A DNA stretch of 64,000 nucleotides from IMGVR_UViG_3300028394_002328:186001-250000; one strand, 5' to 3'. Shown: positions 2,352 to 29,033, counted from the first letter of the stretch. The notes: generated from the sequence alone by a model not told the origin. Numbers and translations: made by a program.

Positions 2352-3021
2352 GTCAATTATTGATAAGTACGAAGAACGGGATCATTACTATTATAACAAG
2401 TTTAAGTATCGGGCTAAATTTCATCTAAAAGGTATCAGGGTATCTATATACTGTGATGATAAAATAGAGTTACCTAATAGGCTAGATAGACCTCGATCTA
2501 AATTTTTTAAAGATTGGTCTGAAATTAACATTCAGCCAATTGAAAATTGGATAGATTGGCGCAATCTTAATAAACCAACTAAACTTATGACTTACCGTAT
2601 TGAGGGTAATAATATTAGTGTGTTTAGTAATGATTTAACTTTACTTGAATCATTGAAAACTTTAGGTGAAGAAATAGATATTCAATATACTGAAGTTAAA
2701 AATGTTTTAACTTATGTAGGTACTAAAACTTTTGTAAGAGATCCAAAGCATAAGTTTCGTATTCATCTTAAAGCAGTCAAGGTAGATAATAATGTATTAG
2801 ATAATTTGCGTAGTATGATTACTAATAATACATCTTTATACCCTAGTAAAGGATTTGAACATTGGCTATCTATAATGCCGCGAACATGGCGACATAAATA
2901 TACCAATGCGGCACATTTCATAGATTATGATGATGAAAGTATGTTGACTTATCTACTAATAGTACATGGCAATATATTTGGTAAAAAATATAAACTAGAA
3001 AAACGGCAACAGGCTGAATAG
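2323..3021 (+). CDS. hypothetical protein
   Basis: 232 aa ORF overlapping the clpA stop, typical phage codon use; no motif recognised. Confidence 0.65.
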   Translation: MRMESLKSTKSIIDKYEERDHYYYNKFKYRAKFHLKGIRVSIYCDDKIELPNRLDRPRSKFFKDWSEINIQPIENWIDWRNLNKPTKLMTYRIEGNNISVFSNDLTLLESLKTLGEEIDIQYTEVKNVLTYVGTKTFVRDPKHKFRIHLKAVKVDNNVLDNLRSMITNNTSLYPSKGFEHWLSIMPRTWRHKYTNAAHFIDYDDESMLTYLLIVHGNIFGKKYKLEKRQQAE

Positions 3022-3024
3022 AAT

Positions 3025-3032
3025 GATAAATA
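3025..3032 (+). promoter_or_regulatory. T4-like late promoter motif GATAAATA
   Basis: Resembles T4 late TATAAATA. The same core precedes genes at 4588, 5559, 14571, 16620, 33769, 46965, 48555, 48998, 51661, 55917, 59019, 60963 (+) and 42008-42015, 60913-60918 (-). Confidence 0.65.
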
Positions 3033-3051
3033 CTCTACAAACGGAGTGTTT

Positions 3052-3222
3052 ATGGCAAAGATTGTTGAGGATGCAATTGTAATCAAGTTTAGTAAAATTG
3101 TCAAAGACCATGAAGGCAAAGATGTTGTAGTTATTGCTAATAGAGAAATTCAGCAAGCACTAGAGCAGGTTGCTCAAGAACTTGTCGGCGATTCTATTGT
3201 AGTAGAAGTGGTTTCAGCGTAA
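3052..3222 (+). CDS. small hypothetical protein (56 aa, MAKIVEDAIVIKFSK...VEVVSA), not in the ORF track
   Basis: GGAG SD upstream, late motif at 3025, TAATG overlap with the next gene. Confidence 0.7.
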   Translation: MAKIVEDAIVIKFSKIVKDHEGKDVVVIANREIQQALEQVAQELVGDSIVVEVVSA

Positions 3223-3608
3223 TGAGCCAGGCTACTACACTTATTCTGTTACCTGAAACTGCCTATGTTAATCCAGGCAATGGTGCCCCATACACCGTAA
3301 CAGGCACTTCTAATCCAGCGGCTGCATATTACTTAGGCAACCGTGATTTACAAACAGTAGCCGTTAAATTAACTCAGGTAACAGGTAACATTGTTATTGA
3401 GGCTAGTCTAGCCACTAGTCCTACAAGTAGTGATTGGTTTCAAGTTTATATGCTAGTAGCAAATGCTAATGCTGCGCCTAACACAGCACCTGAATTAGCA
3501 AGCAATGCTAGCGTATATACAAACATCGAAGGGAATTTTGTTTACATGAGAGCCAAGATTGAAGATTTCAACTCTGGTATCTTACACTATGTAAAATTAA
3601 GTTATTAA
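3222..3608 (+). CDS. hypothetical protein, possibly virion-associated beta-rich protein
   Basis: 128 aa ORF translationally coupled in a late operon; beta-strand-like composition. Confidence 0.65.
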   Translation: MSQATTLILLPETAYVNPGNGAPYTVTGTSNPAAAYYLGNRDLQTVAVKLTQVTGNIVIEASLATSPTSSDWFQVYMLVANANAAPNTAPELASNASVYTNIEGNFVYMRAKIEDFNSGILHYVKLSY

Positions 3609-3634
3609 AAAACTGTAACAATAAGGAGATACAC

Positions 3635-3874
3635 ATGTCAACAGTTGATCAATTGAAAGAGCATTTTGATTCATTTTTAGCAGAGGATGCTAAATTTGAA
3701 AGTGGTAATGCCGCTGCAGGAACTCGTGCCCGTAAAGCACTGCAAGAAGTAGCAAAACTAGTTAAACAACGCCGTGGTGAAATCACTGAAGTTAAGAATG
3801 CTAGAAAAGAAGCTAAAACAGCGGTAGTTGAAGAAGTAAAGCCAGCTAAAGCTAAAAAAGCAAAAGCCGCTTAA
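3635..3874 (+). CDS. histone H1-like (Hc1 family) DNA-binding protein
   Basis: GNAAAGTRARKAL matches the Hc1-family GNKAAGTRARK signature; Lys/Ala-rich tail; AAGGAG SD. Confidence 0.7.
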   Translation: MSTVDQLKEHFDSFLAEDAKFESGNAAAGTRARKALQEVAKLVKQRRGEITEVKNARKEAKTAVVEEVKPAKAKKAKAA

Positions 3875-3877
3875 TAA

Positions 3878-4567
3878 ATGAAAACTTTGGTAGTAATTTC
3901 GGGTGGTTTCCATCCTTTTCATGCAGGACATATGGCATTGTATAACACTGCCAAAAAAACATTTCCTGATGCCGATGTAGTAGTCGGTGCTACTAATGTA
4001 CAAAAAGATAGACCATTTCCTTTTAAGGTTAAACAGAAATTAGCACAAGTATCAGGTGTTCCTCCTAAAAACTTTGTAGAAGTTACAAGACAGTTTTCAT
4101 CACAAGATCCTGAGATTGCTAAAAGAATCGGTGATCCTGAAGATACTATATTAATTTTTGTTCGTAGTGAAAAAGATAAAAACGAAGCACCTTTACCGTG
4201 GAGTTTAAATCCTGATGGTTCAGTGCCTGTTGGTAAAAGAACAGGTAAGCCATTAAGCAACTACTTACTACCTTATAAAGGAAATGAAAACAATTTAGAA
4301 CCATTGACTAAACATGCTTATATGGCATATTTACCTACAGTAGAGTTTGGACCTGGTATTACTAGTGCTACAGAGATTCGTAATGCATGGCCCACATTAA
4401 ATGATAAGCGTAAAACCGCAATGGTTATGAGTCTTTATCCTGCAACACAAAAGAATCCTGCATTAGCAGCCAATGTTGTTGCTATGTTAGATCAGGTTAT
4501 GGGTGCTGCTGATACTGCTGACACACTAAATGAAGATATAAATCAAGATTATTTAGAAGAAAAATAA
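3878..4567 (+). CDS. cytidylyltransferase-like (HIGH-motif) nucleotidyltransferase
   Basis: VVISGGFHPFHAGH (HxGH) N-terminal motif and TSATEIR (SxT/S-type) motif. Confidence 0.75.
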   Translation: MKTLVVISGGFHPFHAGHMALYNTAKKTFPDADVVVGATNVQKDRPFPFKVKQKLAQVSGVPPKNFVEVTRQFSSQDPEIAKRIGDPEDTILIFVRSEKDKNEAPLPWSLNPDGSVPVGKRTGKPLSNYLLPYKGNENNLEPLTKHAYMAYLPTVEFGPGITSATEIRNAWPTLNDKRKTAMVMSLYPATQKNPALAANVVAMLDQVMGAADTADTLNEDINQDYLEEK

Positions 4568-23748: not shown

Positions 23749-24324
23749 ATGATAACTGAATCATTCGTTGGTGAAACTGCGGTTATGGAGTTATATAAAA
23801 AACTCCCTGGCCTATCCAAACACAACTATAATACCATTGATAAATTAATGCGGATAATTGCACAAAAGCATGAACTTAGTAGTGATGCATTGAATGATTT
23901 ATTTGTGAAAAAATTTAATCGTAGTCCTGATAGTTGGGTTAAAGGAAAATTAGACGAATCTGATGTTGAATGTGATTTAGAACAAGAAGTAGAAAAGTTT
24001 GTAGATTGGGCTGCTAAAAAGTTGAATTTACAAACCACTCCCAAAATTGAACTAAGCATGGATACTGAAGAAGCACAAACTAATCATCATACTGGTAGCC
24101 ATACTGATGGTGATAACAGTGTTTGGGTATATGCTAAAAACCGTAATTTGGTTGACATACTAAGAACGGTATTTCACGAATTGGTTCATGTCAGACAAGG
24201 TGAATTGAATATGATTAAACCGGGATCTAGTTACCCTGGCAGCCCAATAGAAGTCATGGCAGATTGTTTAGCTGGCAAGTATATTAAGATATACGGTGAA
24301 AAGAATCACCATATTTTCCAATGA
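23749..24324 (+). CDS. zincin-like metallopeptidase domain protein
   Basis: RTVFHELVHVRQ (HExxH) with downstream E in SPIEV. Confidence 0.65.
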   Translation: MITESFVGETAVMELYKKLPGLSKHNYNTIDKLMRIIAQKHELSSDALNDLFVKKFNRSPDSWVKGKLDESDVECDLEQEVEKFVDWAAKKLNLQTTPKIELSMDTEEAQTNHHTGSHTDGDNSVWVYAKNRNLVDILRTVFHELVHVRQGELNMIKPGSSYPGSPIEVMADCLAGKYIKIYGEKNHHIFQ

Positions 24325-24725
24325 GACATTTTGAATTTATTACCGAACAGAAATCAATCACACAACATACCGAAGGTGGTTCGTTAGAAGGGTATGTTAT
24401 GTCTACAGATAAACCCAATATTAATAACTACTTACAAAGTCAAGGTGCAACACCTGAGTTAATAGACAATATCGCAAAACGGTATAAAACTTTGGGGTTA
24501 ATAAGAAACATGTATGTAGATGATGATTATCGTGGTCAAGGCATTGGTAATGATTTAGTAAGCAACGCAATTGATGATGCTGCTAATAACGGCGCAGAAG
24601 CCATTATATTAATCTCAGATACCGACGAAGATAACCCATTTGATTTAACAAAATGGTATGAGGGTTTTGGGTTTGAAGTAGTGGGTACGGCGGGTAATAA
24701 CCCTGTAATGATACTTGATCTTTAA
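24321..24725 (+). CDS. GNAT family acetyltransferase
   Basis: MYVDDDYRGQGIG motif A and L..WYEGFGF motif B; MRHFEFITE start. Confidence 0.8.
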   Translation: MRHFEFITEQKSITQHTEGGSLEGYVMSTDKPNINNYLQSQGATPELIDNIAKRYKTLGLIRNMYVDDDYRGQGIGNDLVSNAIDDAANNGAEAIILISDTDEDNPFDLTKWYEGFGFEVVGTAGNNPVMILDL

Positions 24726-24743
24726 GTCATCTTGTGTTATCAT
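24715..24743 (+). promoter_or_regulatory. sigma70-type promoter, probably giving a leaderless tilS-like mRNA
   Basis: TTGATC-17 nt-TATCAT; ATG at 24750 lies 6 nt after the -10 box and has no SD. Confidence 0.5.
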
Positions 24744-24749
24744 ACACAG

Positions 24750-25343
24750 ATGCTTAAATTACTTTTTCCATTACCCAAAAAATTGACCGTTGCTTGTAGC
24801 GGCGGTGTAGATAGTATGGCTGTATTAGATTTCTTGCGTAGAAATCATGAGGTTACTGTGGCCTTTTATCATCATAGTACACCTAACAGCGATGCTGCAT
24901 ATCAATTTGTAGCCAATTATTGTAGTGAACATGATTTACCACTATTCTTTGGAAAACTAAACGAATCCAAACCCAAAGAATTAAGTCAAGAAGAGTTTTG
25001 GAGAAATAAGCGTTACGATTTTCTTCGTGGATTTGACACGGTAATTACAGCACATCATTTAGATGATTGTGTAGAAACATATATTTGGTCATCATTACAC
25101 GGAAAAGCAAAACTCCCACATAGATATGTCCGTGGAAATGTTATGCGACCATTTTTAACTACTCCAAAAACAGAATTCATTTCATGGTGTGAACGACACC
25201 ATGTTAAATGGAGTGAGGATATCAGCAATAAAGACACTAATTATACTAGAAATTATATCAGACACGAACTAATGCCACATGCATTAAAGGTTAATCCTGG
25301 ATTAAGAACTACTGTTAAAAAAATTGTTGAGCGAGGTGGTTAA
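24750..25343 (+). CDS. tilS: TilS-like PP-loop ATPase (tRNA(Ile)-lysidine synthase catalytic domain only)
   Basis: VACSGGVDSM, TAHHLDD.VET, RPFL, W.ED.SN.D..YTRNYIRH; lacks the TilS C-terminal domains. Confidence 0.75.
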   Translation: MLKLLFPLPKKLTVACSGGVDSMAVLDFLRRNHEVTVAFYHHSTPNSDAAYQFVANYCSEHDLPLFFGKLNESKPKELSQEEFWRNKRYDFLRGFDTVITAHHLDDCVETYIWSSLHGKAKLPHRYVRGNVMRPFLTTPKTEFISWCERHHVKWSEDISNKDTNYTRNYIRHELMPHALKVNPGLRTTVKKIVERGG

Positions 25344-25985
25344 ATTAAACCTAGTATTGCATTATTCATGAATCATCCAGAATGCAGTGTATTATGTTGC
25401 TCTGGAATGTACGAAGCATTATCATGTGACTTTAATATAGAAATATTGCCGTTTAAAGATGTTAAATTAAAAAAACTTAAGAAGTATCACATTGTAGCCT
25501 TTCCTGGTGGTATTGGCGATAGCGATTCGTTTGAACATCTACTTAAAAACCGTGCTGATGATGTAACCGAATATATTCATAACGGTGGTAGGTACTTGGG
25601 CATTTGCATGGGAGCATACTGGGCAGGCAAATACTATTTTAAGTTGCTTGATGATGTAGAACCAGTACAATATATCAAACGCCGTAAAAGCGATATTAAA
25701 CGAAGTTATGCAACCATAGCAGATGTATTATGGAATGATGAACCACAATCAATGTACTTTTATGATGGGTGTGCATTGATAGGTGACCAAAATAAAATGA
25801 GTATTGTGTCAACCTATGCCAATGGTGATCCAATGGCTATCTACCAAAAACGAATTGGTTTGATTGGGTGCCACCCTGAAAGTATGCCAAGTTGGTACGA
25901 CAGACCCTATCTACAATCATATTGGCATGAATTTGCCCATCATAAACTACTATTATCATTTGTCAACAACTTAATGAAAGCGTAA
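25344..25985 (+). CDS. class I glutamine amidotransferase-like (BPL_N-type) protein; probable ATT start
   Basis: FPGG, YLGICMGAY (nucleophile Cys), CHPE (His-Glu); in-frame IKPSIALF precedes first ATG (25368) and follows SD GAGGTG. Confidence 0.72.
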   Translation: MKPSIALFMNHPECSVLCCSGMYEALSCDFNIEILPFKDVKLKKLKKYHIVAFPGGIGDSDSFEHLLKNRADDVTEYIHNGGRYLGICMGAYWAGKYYFKLLDDVEPVQYIKRRKSDIKRSYATIADVLWNDEPQSMYFYDGCALIGDQNKMSIVSTYANGDPMAIYQKRIGLIGCHPESMPSWYDRPYLQSYWHEFAHHKLLLSFVNNLMKA

Positions 25986-26009
25986 TTGACCCGTAATTAC
26001 GCAAAAAGT

Positions 26010-26038
26010 TTGACTTTGTTACGCACATACTGTATACT
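26010..26038 (+). promoter_or_regulatory. sigma70 promoter for the replication operon
   Basis: TTGACT-17 nt-TATACT. Confidence 0.75.
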
Positions 26039-26061
26039 AAATTACTTCACAAGGAGAATCT

Positions 26062-26322
26062 ATGACTGCACGAACTTTTAGCGCAGAAGCAAAAATTAAG
26101 CTTACCCAAATGATCAACGAAGGCATGGCTACCATGCATGAAATTGATACACTAAACGGTGGCTTGAATGATACCATTAAAGCAGTAGCCGAAGAACTAG
26201 AGATTAAGGCTAGCACATTGAAGAAAGCAGTAAAAATTGCTCATAAGGCTAGTTTGGGTCAGACTAACAAAGACCATGACGAACTCAATACGATTTTGGA
26301 GACGGTTGGCAAAACCCTATGA
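26062..26322 (+). CDS. small helical DNA-binding protein, T4 DsbA-like
   Basis: 86 aa, ..DTIKAVAEELEIK.STLKKAVKIAHK pattern, directly upstream of the polymerase. Confidence 0.5.
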   Translation: MTARTFSAEAKIKLTQMINEGMATMHEIDTLNGGLNDTIKAVAEELEIKASTLKKAVKIAHKASLGQTNKDHDELNTILETVGKTL

Positions 26323-29033
26323 GTTATGTAGACGCTATACATGACCGCAATGGCGACAAGATATTTGTCGTAGAACGGACTACCCAAGGTACAAGGACTT
26401 TTAAAGAGTACCCTGCTAACTATACATTTTATTACAGCGATCCTAAGGGCAAATATCGTAGTCTTTATGGCGATCCTGTAAACAAATTCAGTACAAGAAA
26501 ACGTGCTGAGTTTGAAAAGGAGCGTAGGATTCATTCAGGTAAGAAATTATTTGAAAGTGATATCAATGTAGTCTTTCGCTGCCTTTCAGAGAATTATCTG
26601 AAAATTGATCCTCCTAAGTTGCATACATGCTTCTTTGACATTGAGGTTGATTTTGATCCTGAAAAGGGCTTTAGTCCCACTAGTGATCCATTCAACCCTG
26701 TAACAGCAATTAGTATGTATTTGGATTGGCTAGACCAATTGTTTACTCTATGTATTGCTCCTAAACATATGTCCGAAGAAACGGCACAAGAAATTGTAGG
26801 AGAATTTGATAACACTATCCTTTTTAAAAGTGAAAAGGAAATGTTTGATATGTTCTTTCAGTTGATTGACAATGCCGATGTTCTAACTGGTTGGAACTCA
26901 GAAGGATACGACATACCCTACATGATCAATCGTGTTACTAGGGTAATGAGTAAAGATGATACCCGTAAGTTTTGTTTGATGGGTCAGATGCCTAAGCCAA
27001 GAACTTATGAAAGGTTTGGAAAAGAAGAGCAAACATATGACTTAGTTGGTCGTATTCACATGGACTATCTACAGTTGTACAAAAAATACAATTATGAAAG
27101 TCGCCATAGCTATAAACTAGACTCTATCGGTGAGATGGAAGTTGGTGAAAATAAAACACAATATGAAGGTACTCTTGACCAATTGTATAACAAGGACTTT
27201 AAAAAGTTCCTTGAGTATAACAGGCAGGATACTATGTTGTTGGTTAAGATTCACAACAAGTTGAAATTTCTAGATTTAGCAAATGCTCTAGCACATGAGA
27301 ACACAGTGCTATTGCCAACAGTGATGGGTTCAGTTGCAATGATTGAAATGGCAATCATGAACGAAGCCCATGAGCGTGGTTTAGTAGTCCCTGATAAAAA
27401 ACGAAAGGAAGGAAGTAATGATGAACAACAAGCGGCAGGTGCCTATGTTGCTACGCCCAAAAGGGGCATTCACGAATGGGTCGGAGCAGTTGACATTAAC
27501 AGTCTTTACCCGTCAGCAATCCGCGCTCTTAACATGGCCCCTGAGACCATTGTCGGTCAGGTCAGGCAATCACTCACTAACCAATACATGCAAGACAAAG
27601 GCAAAAGGTTAGCCAACGAAAAGAAACGTGCTAAAGAAGATGACGATGCCGTAACTGGTAGTATTCTATGGGAAGGCTTGTTTGGCTCACTAGAATATAC
27701 TGCTATTATGAACCAAGAACGCGGCACAATGCTTACACTAGACTATGAAGATGGTCGTAGTGAAGAAATGAGTGCGGCAGAGATTTGGAAATTAATCTTT
27801 GATAGTCACAAGCCTTGGATACTTAGTGCTAATGGTACTATATTTAAGTATGACCAAGAAGGTGTGATTCCTGGTCTACTATCACGTTGGTATAGTGATC
27901 GTAAGGTCATGCAAAAGAAACTTAGAGAATCTACTACTGACGAAGATAAAGAGTATTGGGATAAGCGTCAATTAGTGCGTAAGATTTTGCTTAACTCAGC
28001 ATACGGCGCACTATTAAACGAGCATTGTCGTTTCTATGACAAGCGTATCGGTCAAAGTGTTACTCTAAGCGGTAGACAGATTGTTAAGCATATGATGAGT
28101 ACCATCAATGAAACAATCACTGGTGAATATAACCACGATGGTTCTGCGATTGTCTATGGAGATACTGACAGTTGCTACTTTAGTGCTTATGCTAGTTTGC
28201 AACCACAAATAAAAGGTGGTGAATTAGAGTGGAATAAAGAAACTTGTATTGGCTTGTATGATGGTATTGCCGATCAGGCTAACGATTCATTTCCTGCTTT
28301 CATGGAACGAGCATTTCATGCTCCAAGAAAGAATGGAGAAATCATCAAGGCTGGCCGTGAATTGATTGGTGATCGTACACTGTTTATCACAAAGAAACGT
28401 TATGCTATCAATATCTTTGACAAAGAAGGTAAGCGCAAAGATAAAGACGGTAAAATGGGTGACGTTAAGGCTATGGGCCTTGATTTGAAACGAGCGGATA
28501 CTCCTAAATACATTCAAGACTTTTTGATGGACGTCTTGTGTATGGTATTGCAAGAGGGTAAAAGCCGCGAAGAAGTCATTGAAAAAATCAAAGAGTTTAA
28601 GAAAACACTAAGTGAACAGGACAGTTGGACTAAAGGATCTCCTAAAGGTGTAAACAAACTTACAACGTATGGAGACTTGGAAGCTAACAGTAAAACTGGT
28701 CGTGCTAATATGCCAGGACATGTTAGAGCGGCATTGAACTATAACTACTTACGCAGAGTTAATGGTGACAATTATTCTATGAAAATCGTTGATGGAATGA
28801 AGGTTATCGTTTGTAAACTAAAACAAAATGCGTTAGGGTTCACTAGTATTGCATATCCAACTGATGAATTAAGGTTACCTGCTTGGTTCTGTGAACTTCC
28901 ATTTGATGATAACGAAATGGAACGTACATTAGTAGATGAAAAAATAGAAAATTTGCTAGGTGTATTAGGTTGGGATTTGCGTAGTAATACTAATACTAAT
29001 TCAACATTTGACCAATTGTTTACATTTGGGTAA
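26319..29033 (+). CDS. family B DNA polymerase (T4 gp43-like)
   Basis: Exo I FFDIEVD, Exo II GWNSEGYD, Exo III YNRQD; pol motifs VDINSLYPS, KILLNSAYG, YGDTDS; KKRYA; no intein or intron seen. Confidence 0.96.
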   Translation: MSYVDAIHDRNGDKIFVVERTTQGTRTFKEYPANYTFYYSDPKGKYRSLYGDPVNKFSTRKRAEFEKERRIHSGKKLFESDINVVFRCLSENYLKIDPPKLHTCFFDIEVDFDPEKGFSPTSDPFNPVTAISMYLDWLDQLFTLCIAPKHMSEETAQEIVGEFDNTILFKSEKEMFDMFFQLIDNADVLTGWNSEGYDIPYMINRVTRVMSKDDTRKFCLMGQMPKPRTYERFGKEEQTYDLVGRIHMDYLQLYKKYNYESRHSYKLDSIGEMEVGENKTQYEGTLDQLYNKDFKKFLEYNRQDTMLLVKIHNKLKFLDLANALAHENTVLLPTVMGSVAMIEMAIMNEAHERGLVVPDKKRKEGSNDEQQAAGAYVATPKRGIHEWVGAVDINSLYPSAIRALNMAPETIVGQVRQSLTNQYMQDKGKRLANEKKRAKEDDDAVTGSILWEGLFGSLEYTAIMNQERGTMLTLDYEDGRSEEMSAAEIWKLIFDSHKPWILSANGTIFKYDQEGVIPGLLSRWYSDRKVMQKKLRESTTDEDKEYWDKRQLVRKILLNSAYGALLNEHCRFYDKRIGQSVTLSGRQIVKHMMSTINETITGEYNHDGSAIVYGDTDSCYFSAYASLQPQIKGGELEWNKETCIGLYDGIADQANDSFPAFMERAFHAPRKNGEIIKAGRELIGDRTLFITKKRYAINIFDKEGKRKDKDGKMGDVKAMGLDLKRADTPKYIQDFLMDVLCMVLQEGKSREEVIEKIKEFKKTLSEQDSWTKGSPKGVNKLTTYGDLEANSKTGRANMPGHVRAALNYNYLRRVNGDNYSMKIVDGMKVIVCKLKQNALGFTSIAYPTDELRLPAWFCELPFDDNEMERTLVDEKIENLLGVLGWDLRSNTNTNSTFDQLFTFG

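What the first reader, a model, noticed from the sequence alone, without database searches (positions are those of the whole stretch)
24715..25985. tilS-like and GATase genes are in one frame split by a single TAA; the GATase appears to need an AUU start or read-through
Seen: ...GAG CGA GGT GGT TAA ATT AAA CCT AGT ATT GCA TTA TTC ATG. The hydrophobic strand PSIALF lies upstream of the first ATG, and SD GAGGTG (25333-25338) sits 5 nt before ATT 25344. The tilS-like gene itself looks leaderless. Known: AUU initiation is rare and IF3-sensitive (infC); class I GATase folds start with a hydrophobic beta strand. Inference: either non-canonical initiation control or a recently split / read-through ATPase-GATase fusion.
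Basis: partly seen in the sequence, partly recalled or inferred. Interest (0 to 1): 0.6.

Follow-up and report, generated by a model that had tools for sequence, protein, structure and literature searches.

The report
Phage amidotransferase gene starting at ATT

Summary
The tilS-like gene (24750-25343) and the GATase-like gene share one frame, separated only by TAA 25341-25343. ATT 25344 follows directly. GAGGTG 25333-25338 lies 5 nt before ATT, and the first ATG is 25368.

Homologues settle the start. Over 5,000 relatives begin M-K-P-x-I-A-L-F-x-N-H-P-E-C-S, and the window has ATT exactly where they have Met. Of 78 related viral loci outside the window's clade, 77 have ATG, GTG or TTG at or within a few codons of that position (one lay too near its contig end to check). 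Only the window's clade (seven loci counting the window's own, 87-100% DNA identity) has TAA-ATT.

Within that clade, all six nucleotide differences in the seven codons before ATG 25368 are synonymous, including AGT/TCT for Ser. The SD and ATT never vary. The predicted fold puts residues 4-9 in strand beta-1, and solved stand-alone glutaminases begin at model residues 2-3.

Read-through or a split fusion is not supported. No fusion homologues turned up, TAA is the genome's main stop, no suppressor tRNA is present, and in relatives the two genes lie on opposite strands.

The "leaderless" remark on tilS is supported by a conserved extended -10 box ending 6 nt before the ATG. Verdict: AUU initiation coupled to tilS termination, much like thrS-infC. 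It is a new member of a known kind.

The parts
24715..24743 (+). Sigma-70-type promoter: -35 TTGATC (24715-24720), 17-nt spacer, extended -10 TGtTATCAT (24735-24743). It ends 6 nt before ATG 24750, so the predicted transcript start falls on or next to the A of the ATG.
   Evidence: 9 of 12 matches, TG present; the same TGnTAnnnT + 6 nt + ATG geometry, without an SD, in the window's clade and in about 12 further phage loci whose TilS-like proteins are 54-75% identical.
24750..25343 (+). tilS-like gene of 197 aa: PP-loop ATPase, catalytic N-domain only, with the SGGVDS motif. Probably translated from a leaderless mRNA.
   Evidence: PF01171 3e-35; TIGR02432 126 bits against a 93.6 cut-off; full-length TilS model only 65.5 of 606 bits. 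In L007 an in-frame TAG lies directly before the ATG, which fixes the start.
25333..25340 (+). Shine-Dalgarno GAGGTGGT, embedded in the last codons (R-G-G) of the tilS-like gene, 5 nt before ATT.
   Evidence: It is invariant in all seven loci of the clade even though the codons just before it differ (GAG CGA versus GAA AGA). The R-G-G tail is specific to this clade; relatives end in -NKN, -GKI or -KQR.
25341..25343 (+). TAA stop of the tilS-like gene, directly abutting the ATT.
   Evidence: TAA is the stop of 215 of 318 crude gene calls. None of the 18 phage tRNAs has a stop-reading anticodon.
25344..25346 (+). ATT, the proposed start codon of the GATase-like gene.
   Evidence: It aligns with the Met start of the homologues and is invariant in the clade.
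25347..25367 (+). Seven codons (K-P-S-I-A-L-F) upstream of the first ATG. They encode strand beta-1 of the fold.
   Evidence: They match the family consensus K-P-x-I-A-L-F. All changes between lineages are synonymous: CCT/CCC, AGT/TCT, ATT/ATA, GCA/GCG and TTA/CTA. The model has strand E4-9 with pLDDT about 90.
25368..25370 (+). First canonical ATG (Met9), used as the start in the public gene calls. No SD precedes it, and it lies at the end of strand beta-1.
   Evidence: P0001, 205 aa; the Atlas holds the sequence only from residue 9.
25344..25985 (+). GATase-like gene, 213 codons from ATT. BPL_N / class-I glutamine amidotransferase fold with a conserved Cys88-His177-Glu179 triad.
   Evidence: C88, H177, E179 invariant; pLDDT 89.1; Pdx2/HisH; Z 19.5, rmsd 2.5, 177 aligned.
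25980..26002 (.). Inverted repeat (8 pairs) overlapping the GATase stop codon. It may mark the 3' end of the two-gene unit. On the + strand it is followed by A's, not T's.
   Evidence: A new promoter-like site (26010-26038, TTGACT-17-TATACT) and an AGGAG SD precede the next gene, at 26062.

Best explanation
The GATase-like protein is made as a 213-residue protein whose translation starts at AUU 25344. It is the second cistron of a short early transcript. That transcript begins at or next to the AUG of the tilS-like gene, so it is leaderless and driven by a sigma-70-type extended -10 promoter. Ribosomes reach the AUU in two ways: de novo through the strong SD GAGGUGG(U) placed 5 nt upstream inside the last tilS codons, and by re-initiation after terminating at the directly adjacent UAA. 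Initiator tRNA reads AUU with a third-position mismatch, so the product should begin fMet-Lys-Pro, like its homologues. The likely consequence is several-fold lower output than from AUG, tied to tilS translation and sensitive to IF3. What is shown: the codons between ATT and the ATG are under protein-level selection; ATT sits at the homologous start position; the SD is conserved. What is inferred: the act of initiation at AUU, the coupling, and the IF3 sensitivity.
For: (1) Alignment of 29 homologues out of 5,513 hits: all begin M/V-K-P-x-I-A-L-F-x-N-H-P-E-C-S, and the window reads I-K-P-S-I-A-L-F-M-N-H-P-E-C-S. (2) Of 78 IMG/VR loci outside the window's clade, the 77 that could be checked all have ATG, GTG or TTG at the homologous codon or within a few codons of it. 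Only the window's clade has TAA-ATT. Two database proteins that seemed to start at the inner Met (P0048, P0028) have an upstream ATG and were simply mis-called. (3) Within the clade (GATase gene DNA 87-100% identical), the 21 nt before ATG 25368 carry six nucleotide differences, all synonymous, including the two-base Ser switch AGT/TCT. Under a uniform substitution model, four random changes keep the peptide in 0.11% of trials and two in 3.9%. (4) ATT, TAA and GAGGTGG never vary although neighbouring codons do. (5) In the AF2 model (pLDDT 89.1), strand beta-1 is residues 4-9, so a start at Met9 would delete it. Solved stand-alone glutaminases (Pdx2, HisH) align from their residue 1 to model residues 2-3. 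(6) ATG 25368 has no SD. (7) Precedent: the E. coli thrS-infC junction is UAA GGU AUU. There AUU gave about a quarter of the AUG yield, and twice the yield of an uncoupled AUU (PMC3592434).
Against: There is no direct evidence of translation: no proteomics, no ribosome profiling, and the host is unknown. Synonymous-only change shows that the codons are translated but does not by itself separate AUU initiation from UAA read-through. The clade supplies only three or four lineages and 21 nt, so the statistics are thin. A shorter product from ATG 25368 may be made as well. AUU efficiency figures come from E. coli, not from the unknown host.
Confidence: 0.77

Rival explanations
1. Translation starts at ATG 25368, as the public gene calls have it, and gives a 205-residue protein that lacks strand beta-1. 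The upstream 24 nt would be only an untranslated spacer.
For: ATG is the only canonical start in the ORF. Gene callers chose it (P0001; Atlas record). Met occurs at this position in a few homologues too.
Against: No SD lies before it. The 21 nt upstream change only synonymously and at the same rate as the gene as a whole. This start would remove a core strand that every checked homologue encodes.
Confidence: 0.1
2. Read-through of TAA 25341 yields a TilS-GATase fusion of about 410 residues, either as a programmed event or as the remnant of a recently split fusion gene.
For: The two genes share a frame and are separated by a single stop. PP-loop plus class-I GATase is a known pairing, as in GMP synthetase (general knowledge). 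A predicted complex got weak support: score 0.50 against a best control of 0.00. Of the calibration set, only 5 of 78 solved complexes but all 4 passing mismatches scored 0.60 or under.
Against: Searching with the read-through product (X at the stop) found 208 longer homologues; none of the 120 listed carries PF01171 and all are 226-296 aa. TAA is the genome's commonest stop, and no suppressor tRNA is among the 18 tRNAs. In relatives the GATase gene lies on the opposite strand inside the same gene block, so the ancestral state was two separate genes. A conserved SD at start-codon spacing would be pointless for read-through.
Confidence: 0.03
3. The ATT is a tolerated, mildly deleterious ATG-to-ATT mutation kept alive by coupling to tilS. 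The gene is drifting toward loss and there is no regulatory meaning.
For: Only one clade has it. The GATase is dispensable in the sense that many phages lack it: no match was found in the INPHARED phage collection.
Against: The state has persisted across about 13% DNA divergence with 56 synonymous against 15 non-synonymous codon differences, so the gene is under purifying selection. The SD is embedded in a clade-specific TilS tail. This rival concerns why the ATT exists, not where translation starts, so it is compatible with the main explanation.
Confidence: 0.1

Closest known systems
E. coli thrS-infC junction (the AUU start of IF3) and pcnB (also AUU)
   Same: An AUU start codon placed directly behind the UAA of the preceding gene (infC: UAA GGU AUU; here: UAA AUU), with an SD inside the upstream gene's 3' end. 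In both, translation is a mix of de novo initiation and re-initiation (PMC3592434). AUU is discriminated against by IF3 (PMC9723500).
   Different: The gene here is not a translation factor, so no autoregulatory loop is expected. The stop and start are juxtaposed with no spacer. The upstream cistron appears to be leaderless. The gene belongs to a phage, and only one clade of a large family has this start.
Stand-alone class-I glutaminase subunits (Pdx2/YaaE, HisH, two-subunit GMP synthetase subunit A)
   Same: The fold (Z 17-19.5, rmsd 2.5-2.8 over about 177-185 residues), the size, the Cys-His-Glu triad, and an N-terminus 1-3 residues before strand beta-1.
   Different: Sequence identity is only 14-20%. 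The protein belongs to the BPL_N family (PF09825), whose viral members are uncharacterised. No synthase partner has been identified. It has extra conserved Cys and His residues (HPECS, WH..HH).
Phage-encoded short TilS (Pseudomonas jumbo phages MIJ3 and PA5oct)
   Same: About 200 residues, PP-loop N-domain only, 44% identical, and annotated as tRNA(Ile)-lysidine synthase (PMC6892783).
   Different: Those phages have no GATase gene next to it or anywhere in the phage collection, and their tilS has an SD rather than a promoter abutting the ATG.
Leaderless mRNAs such as lambda cI
   Same: A -10 box about 6-7 nt before an AUG, with no SD. Leaderless translation is inhibited by excess IF3 (PMC9031893).
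   Different: Here the leaderless cistron is followed by a second cistron that is SD-led and AUU-initiated. The transcript start itself has not been mapped.

Membership tests
AUU-initiated bacterial/phage genes (infC, pcnB type) | No canonical start codon can give the conserved full-length N-terminus. | tested here: met
   The ORF opens directly after TAA. The only ATG, GTG or TTG before residue 10 is ATG 25368 (Met9), which lies at the end of strand beta-1.
AUU-initiated bacterial/phage genes (infC, pcnB type) | The AUU sits at the position of the homologues' start codon, with an SD at working distance. | tested here: met
   Alignment A1 and the 77 checked outgroup loci. GAGGTGG lies 5 nt upstream and is invariant in the clade.
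AUU-initiated bacterial/phage genes (infC, pcnB type) | The product begins with fMet decoded at AUU, and expression rises when IF3 is low. | not testable with these tools
   This needs N-terminal sequencing, toeprinting, or reporters in infC mutants.
Class-I glutamine amidotransferase (triad GATase) | A Cys-His-Glu triad on a nucleophile elbow within the flavodoxin-like fold. | tested here: met
   C88 (in G-I-C-M-G), H177 and E179 are invariant in 30 sequences. PF00117 scores 28.4 bits (cut-off 22.8) and PF09825 36 bits (cut-off 24.2). Pdx2/HisH match at Z 19.5.
Class-I glutamine amidotransferase (triad GATase) | Glutaminase activity coupled to a synthase partner. | not testable with these tools
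   No partner is known. The TilS-like neighbour got only weak support in complex prediction: 0.50 against a control of 0.00.
TilS, tRNA(Ile)-lysidine synthetase | A PP-loop N-terminal catalytic domain with the SGGxDS motif. | tested here: met
   SGGVDS is present. TIGR02432 scores 126 bits against a 93.6 cut-off, with all 189 positions matched.
TilS, tRNA(Ile)-lysidine synthetase | C-terminal tRNA-binding domains, as in full-length TilS of about 320-440 aa. | tested here: not met
   The protein has only 197 residues, and the full-length model NF007942 scores 65.5 bits against a 606 cut-off. It is therefore filed as TilS-like, a minimal form.
TilS, tRNA(Ile)-lysidine synthetase | A substrate tRNA-Ile(CAU) is available. 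| tested here: inconclusive
   The phage encodes a tRNA with a CAU anticodon and a G1-C72 pair, so it is not an initiator. ATA codons are frequent, at 21.3 per 1000. Ile2 and elongator Met were not told apart.
Leaderless mRNA | The transcript 5' end lies at or next to the AUG, with no SD. | tested here: inconclusive
   The promoter geometry is conserved across about 19 loci, but the transcript start has not been mapped. The only RNA library laid gave no contig here.
Fused PP-loop-GATase enzymes (GMP synthetase type) | Both domains lie in one polypeptide in relatives. | tested here: not met
   None of the 120 listed longer homologues (of 208) has PF01171. In relatives the two genes lie on opposite strands.

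The most novel reading that the evidence does not exclude
In phages that carry both genes, the minimal TilS-like PP-loop enzyme and the GATase might work as a two-subunit, glutamine-dependent amidotransferase, built like two-subunit GMP synthetase. It would adenylate a pyrimidine C2 carbonyl and add ammonia instead of lysine, giving a tRNA or nucleotide modification not yet described. The leaderless plus UAA-AUU design would then serve to tie the two subunits' synthesis together and to the host's IF3 state.
Probability: 0.07. Interest if true: 0.75.

Novelty: new member of a known kind. Interest (0 to 1): 0.35.

Why it matters
There are three practical points.

1. Every public record of this protein's clade (P0001, and the Atlas entry) starts at Met9 and lacks a core strand. 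Anyone expressing or modelling it from those records would be working with a truncated protein.

2. This is a clean, comparatively supported natural AUU start outside infC and pcnB, with the stop and start codons juxtaposed. It could serve as a test case for gene callers and for studies of re-initiation at near-cognate codons.

3. The operon combines three features that the literature reports as inhibited by excess IF3: a leaderless first cistron, re-initiation, and an AUU start. If confirmed, its expression would report the host's initiation-factor state during infection.

None of this changes a general principle. The GATase family itself (over 5,000 clusters, mostly viral, function unknown) is probably the more valuable target.

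Tried and rejected
- **Phage collection and PHROGs.** tblastn of the GATase against the INPHARED phage collection gave no match. PHROGs has no family for either protein.
- **RNA structure at the junction (25290-25420).** Not different from shuffles, z = 0.18, so no structural switch is proposed.
- **Fusion search.** I repeated it with X at the stop, not with another genetic code, and found no fusion.
- **Independent non-canonical starts elsewhere in the family.** P0048 and P0028 looked N-terminally short, but both have an upstream ATG giving M-S-K-T-I-A-L-F and M-K-P-R-I-A-L-F. They are gene-caller artefacts.
- **ATT starts as a genome-wide habit.** The screen found only this gene.
- **A phage-encoded IF3.** None found with PF00707.
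- **Coupling through a mini-ORF.** A +1-frame mini-ORF runs from GTG 25336 to TGA 25369-25371 and forms an ATGA overlap with ATG 25368. In the L004 lineage it ends early at TAG, so it is not conserved and I rejected it (sequences).
- **Functional linkage judged from neighbourhood.** All 16 loci where tilS and the GATase are adjacent share one gene block (SNase, 191-aa gene, tilS, GATase, dsbA-like). They therefore count as one observation, not independent ones. Two complete phage genomes, G002 and G006, have the GATase without any PP-loop gene.
- **Complex prediction for TilS-like plus GATase.** Weak support only: 0.50 against a best control of 0.00, contacts agreeing in at least 83% of runs, partner pLDDT at least 91. 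It is not used as evidence of binding.
- **Other neighbours of the GATase in other clades** (DnaB-like helicase, DUF6267, metallophosphatase) gave no functional clue.
- **Literature searches** for BPL_N in phages and for leaderless late promoters returned nothing relevant.
- **The large HMMER search** was not run. The operators called it costly, and the word search already gave thousands of relatives.

Full report
**Setting.** The window is bases 186001-250000 of a 335,035-bp IMG/VR virus record estimated 95% complete. It has 37% G+C, a family-B DNA polymerase (26319-29033) and a T4 DsbA-like regulator next to the finding. It also carries 18 tRNA genes outside the window. Runs that hold this DNA are freshwater metagenomes. 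The organism is therefore an uncultured freshwater jumbo phage with T4-like replication genes.

**The observation.**
- The tilS-like ORF runs from ATG 24750 to TAA 25341-25343.
- ATT 25344 follows with no spacer and in the same frame.
- The next seven codons encode K-P-S-I-A-L-F, and the first canonical start is ATG 25368.
- GAGGTG lies at 25333-25338, 5 nt before ATT. It extends to GAGGTGGT if one G-U pair with the 16S tail is allowed.
- ATG 25368 has no purine-rich run before it.

Gene A matches the PP-loop family (PF01171, 3e-35) and the TilS N-domain equivalog (TIGR02432, 126 bits, cut-off 93.6). It has only 197 residues and fails the full-length TilS model. Gene B matches BPL_N and class-I GATase.

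**Where gene B starts.** A word-based search found 5,513 homologue clusters, nearly all 205-225 residues long.
- In an alignment of 29 of them, the family begins M/V-K-P-x-I-A-L-F-x-N-H-P-E-C-S. The window's translation from ATT reads I-K-P-S-I-A-L-F-M-N-H-P-E-C-S, so ATT occupies the homologues' start codon.
- I fetched 80 related loci from IMG/VR and four contigs carrying the 93%-identical protein P0001, then read the codon aligned to residue 1 in each.
- Of the 78 IMG/VR loci outside the window's clade, the 77 that could be checked have ATG, GTG or TTG at that codon or within a few codons of it, and each keeps the strand. One locus lay too near its contig end to check.
- Only the window's clade has TAA-ATT: the window's own record (L003), L008 and L009, and L004-L007.
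- Two database proteins that appeared to start at the inner Met (P0048, P0028) have an upstream ATG that the gene caller missed.

**Are the codons before the ATG translated?** Within the clade the GATase DNA is 87-100% identical. Against the L004 lineage, 56 codons differ synonymously and 15 non-synonymously. In the 21 nt between ATT and ATG the lineages differ at CCT/CCC, AGT/TCT, ATT/ATA and GCA/GCG. A further variant in an independent run has TTA/CTA.
- All six nucleotide differences are synonymous.
- The Ser switch AGT/TCT needs two changes through non-synonymous intermediates.
- Under a uniform model, four random changes in this stretch keep the peptide in 0.11% of trials and two changes in 3.9%.
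- The stretch changes at the same rate as the gene as a whole (4 of 24 nt against 12.6%), so it is constrained as protein, not as an RNA signal.

ATT, TAA and GAGGTGG are invariant, while the codons just before them differ (GAG CGA versus GAA AGA). The R-G-G tail that encodes the SD is specific to this clade. Relatives of TilS end in -NKN, -GKI, -KQR and similar.

**Structure.** AlphaFold2 with alignment A1 gives a confident model (pLDDT 89.1, pTM 0.89) with strand beta-1 at residues 4-9. Met9 is the last residue of that strand.
- Foldseek and VIA-align place the model among stand-alone class-I glutaminases such as Pdx2/YaaE and HisH. The best match is 2nv2_L at Z 19.5, rmsd 2.5 over 177 residues.
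- Residue 1 of those solved chains aligns with model residues 2-3. The natural N-terminus of this fold therefore lies where the ATT is.
- Cys88, His177 and Glu179 are invariant.

**Read-through or split fusion.** I read the two genes through with X at the stop, without naming another genetic code, and searched with the GATase part. Only proteins of 226-719 residues were candidates. Of the 208 hits, the 120 listed are 226-296 residues long and none carries PF01171.
- TAA ends 215 of 318 crude gene calls, and none of the 18 tRNAs reads a stop codon.
- Two complete phage genomes, G002 and G006, have the GATase but no PP-loop gene.
- PA5oct-like phages have the short TilS but no GATase.
- In the nearest other phages the gene block is SNase, a 191-aa gene, tilS, GATase, dsbA-like. 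This is the same block as in the window, but there the GATase lies on the opposite strand.
- The window's clade therefore arose by inversion of the GATase gene, not by splitting a fusion.
- In those relatives the GATase start is preceded by ATAAATA at 4-7 nt. That is the T4 late-promoter motif (my knowledge), placed so that the mRNA would be leaderless. After the inversion the gene lost that context and now depends on the tilS transcript, on an SD built into the TilS tail, and on ATT.

**The tilS start.**
- A promoter-like site (TTGATC, 17 nt, TATCAT, with TG upstream) ends 6 nt before ATG 24750.
- The same geometry, TGnTAnnnT + 6 nt + ATG without an SD, is kept in four different upstream contexts within the clade. 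It is also kept in about 12 further loci whose TilS-like proteins are only 54-75% identical.
- In L007 an in-frame TAG directly precedes the ATG, which fixes the start.
- Genome-wide, ATAAATA piles up 4-7 nt before SD-less start codons in 22 genes, and four more genes have an extended -10 box exactly 6 nt before ATG. Leaderless or near-leaderless messages therefore look like a habit of this phage.
- The transcript start has not been mapped. The only RNA library laid gave contigs only at 25786-25965 and beyond 26053.

**Mechanism proposed.** An early leaderless transcript starts at 24750. Ribosomes translate tilS and stop at UAA 25341. The GATase is then initiated at the adjacent AUU, both de novo through the SD and by re-initiation.

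The closest precedent is E. coli thrS-infC (UAA GGU AUU). In reporters, AUU there gave about a quarter of the AUG yield and twice the yield of an uncoupled AUU. The total was a roughly equal sum of re-initiation and de novo initiation (PMC3592434). Excess IF3 lowers re-initiation (PMC2268962) and leaderless translation (PMC9031893), and IF3 discriminates against non-canonical starts (PMC9723500). By inference, both cistrons would respond in the same direction to IF3. The phage encodes no IF3 of its own.

**What the genes do.**
- The TilS-like protein is most simply a minimal lysidine synthetase. The phage has a non-initiator tRNA(CAU) and uses ATA at 21.3 per 1000 codons.
- The GATase belongs to a large, mostly viral, uncharacterised BPL_N family.
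- A predicted TilS-GATase complex got only weak support: 0.50 against a best control of 0.00. In calibration, 5 of 78 solved complexes but all 4 passing mismatches scored 0.60 or under. Given the independent distribution of the two genes, I do not claim that they bind.

**Verdict.** The AUU start is the best explanation (about 0.77), the fusion or read-through reading is disfavoured, and the leaderless remark is supported. This is a new member of a known kind. Its practical consequence is that public records hold a truncated protein.

Noticed in passing
G000 whole genome (e.g. genome positions 168066, 170661, 172887, 241931, 246978; the last two are window 55931 and 60978): ATAAATA, the T4 late-promoter-like motif, lies 4-7 nt before SD-less start codons (21 ATG, 1 GTG) in 22 of 318 crude gene calls, many of them large genes. 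Four more genes have a sigma-70 extended -10 box exactly 6 nt before ATG. Leaderless or near-leaderless mRNAs seem to be a general habit of this phage, for early and late genes alike.
   Followed up: partly
window 24321-24725: The GNAT acetyltransferase gene (134 aa) just upstream of tilS is present only in the window's own lineage (L003, L008). It is absent from the 98%-related L009 and from L004, where the 191-aa gene abuts the tilS promoter. It looks like a recent insertion, and its 3' end now supplies the -35 box (TTGATC instead of TTGACT).
   Followed up: partly
G000 270988-282573 (outside the window), tRNA(CAU) at 274145-274222 minus strand: A cluster of 18 tRNA genes. The CAU-anticodon tRNA has a G1-C72 pair, so it is not an initiator, and it may be the tRNA-Ile2 substrate of the phage TilS. 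ATA makes up 31% of Ile codons.
   Followed up: partly
L028, L034, L044, L052, L055, L056, L058, L064, L070 (match at about 3001-3640, tilS at about 3630-4460 on the minus strand): In related phages the GATase gene is inverted relative to tilS and dsbA inside the same gene block, and it has its own ATAAATA + 4-7 nt + ATG start. The window's clade therefore changed the gene's strand, and probably its timing class from late to early.
   Followed up: yes
L007:150-1397: This contig has a GATase identical in protein to L004's but a TilS-like protein only 75% identical to the window's (against 96% in L004). The TAA-ATT junction is the same. This suggests recombination close to the junction.
   Followed up: no
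G001 (524,565-bp IMG/VR record): L019, L079, L088, L090: One huge phage carries two GATase copies (at about 71.6 kb and 182.7 kb) and two TilS-like copies (at about 17.9 kb and 511.6 kb), none of them adjacent.
   Followed up: no
L092:1477-2127 and L093:1438-2079: The database proteins P0048 (208 aa) and P0028 (192 aa) are N-terminally truncated gene calls. An upstream in-frame ATG restores the conserved strand.
   Followed up: yes
window 25786-25965 and 26053-26100: Contigs from a lake metatranscriptome library (run X20) match the 3' part of the GATase gene and the start of the dsbA-like gene. This is a hint of expression, but DNA carry-over cannot be excluded.
   Followed up: no
L004:4952-8470 compared with window 26319-29033: In the 93%-related phage, three extra genes (260 aa on the minus strand, then 128 aa and 242 aa) lie between the dsbA-like gene and the DNA polymerase, and the polymerase call there is only 481 aa against 904 aa in the window. 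It may be a split or interrupted polymerase.
   Followed up: no
window 25336-25371: A +1-frame mini-ORF (GTG to TGA) overlaps ATG 25368 as ATGA. It is not conserved in the L004 lineage, so it is probably chance.
   Followed up: yes
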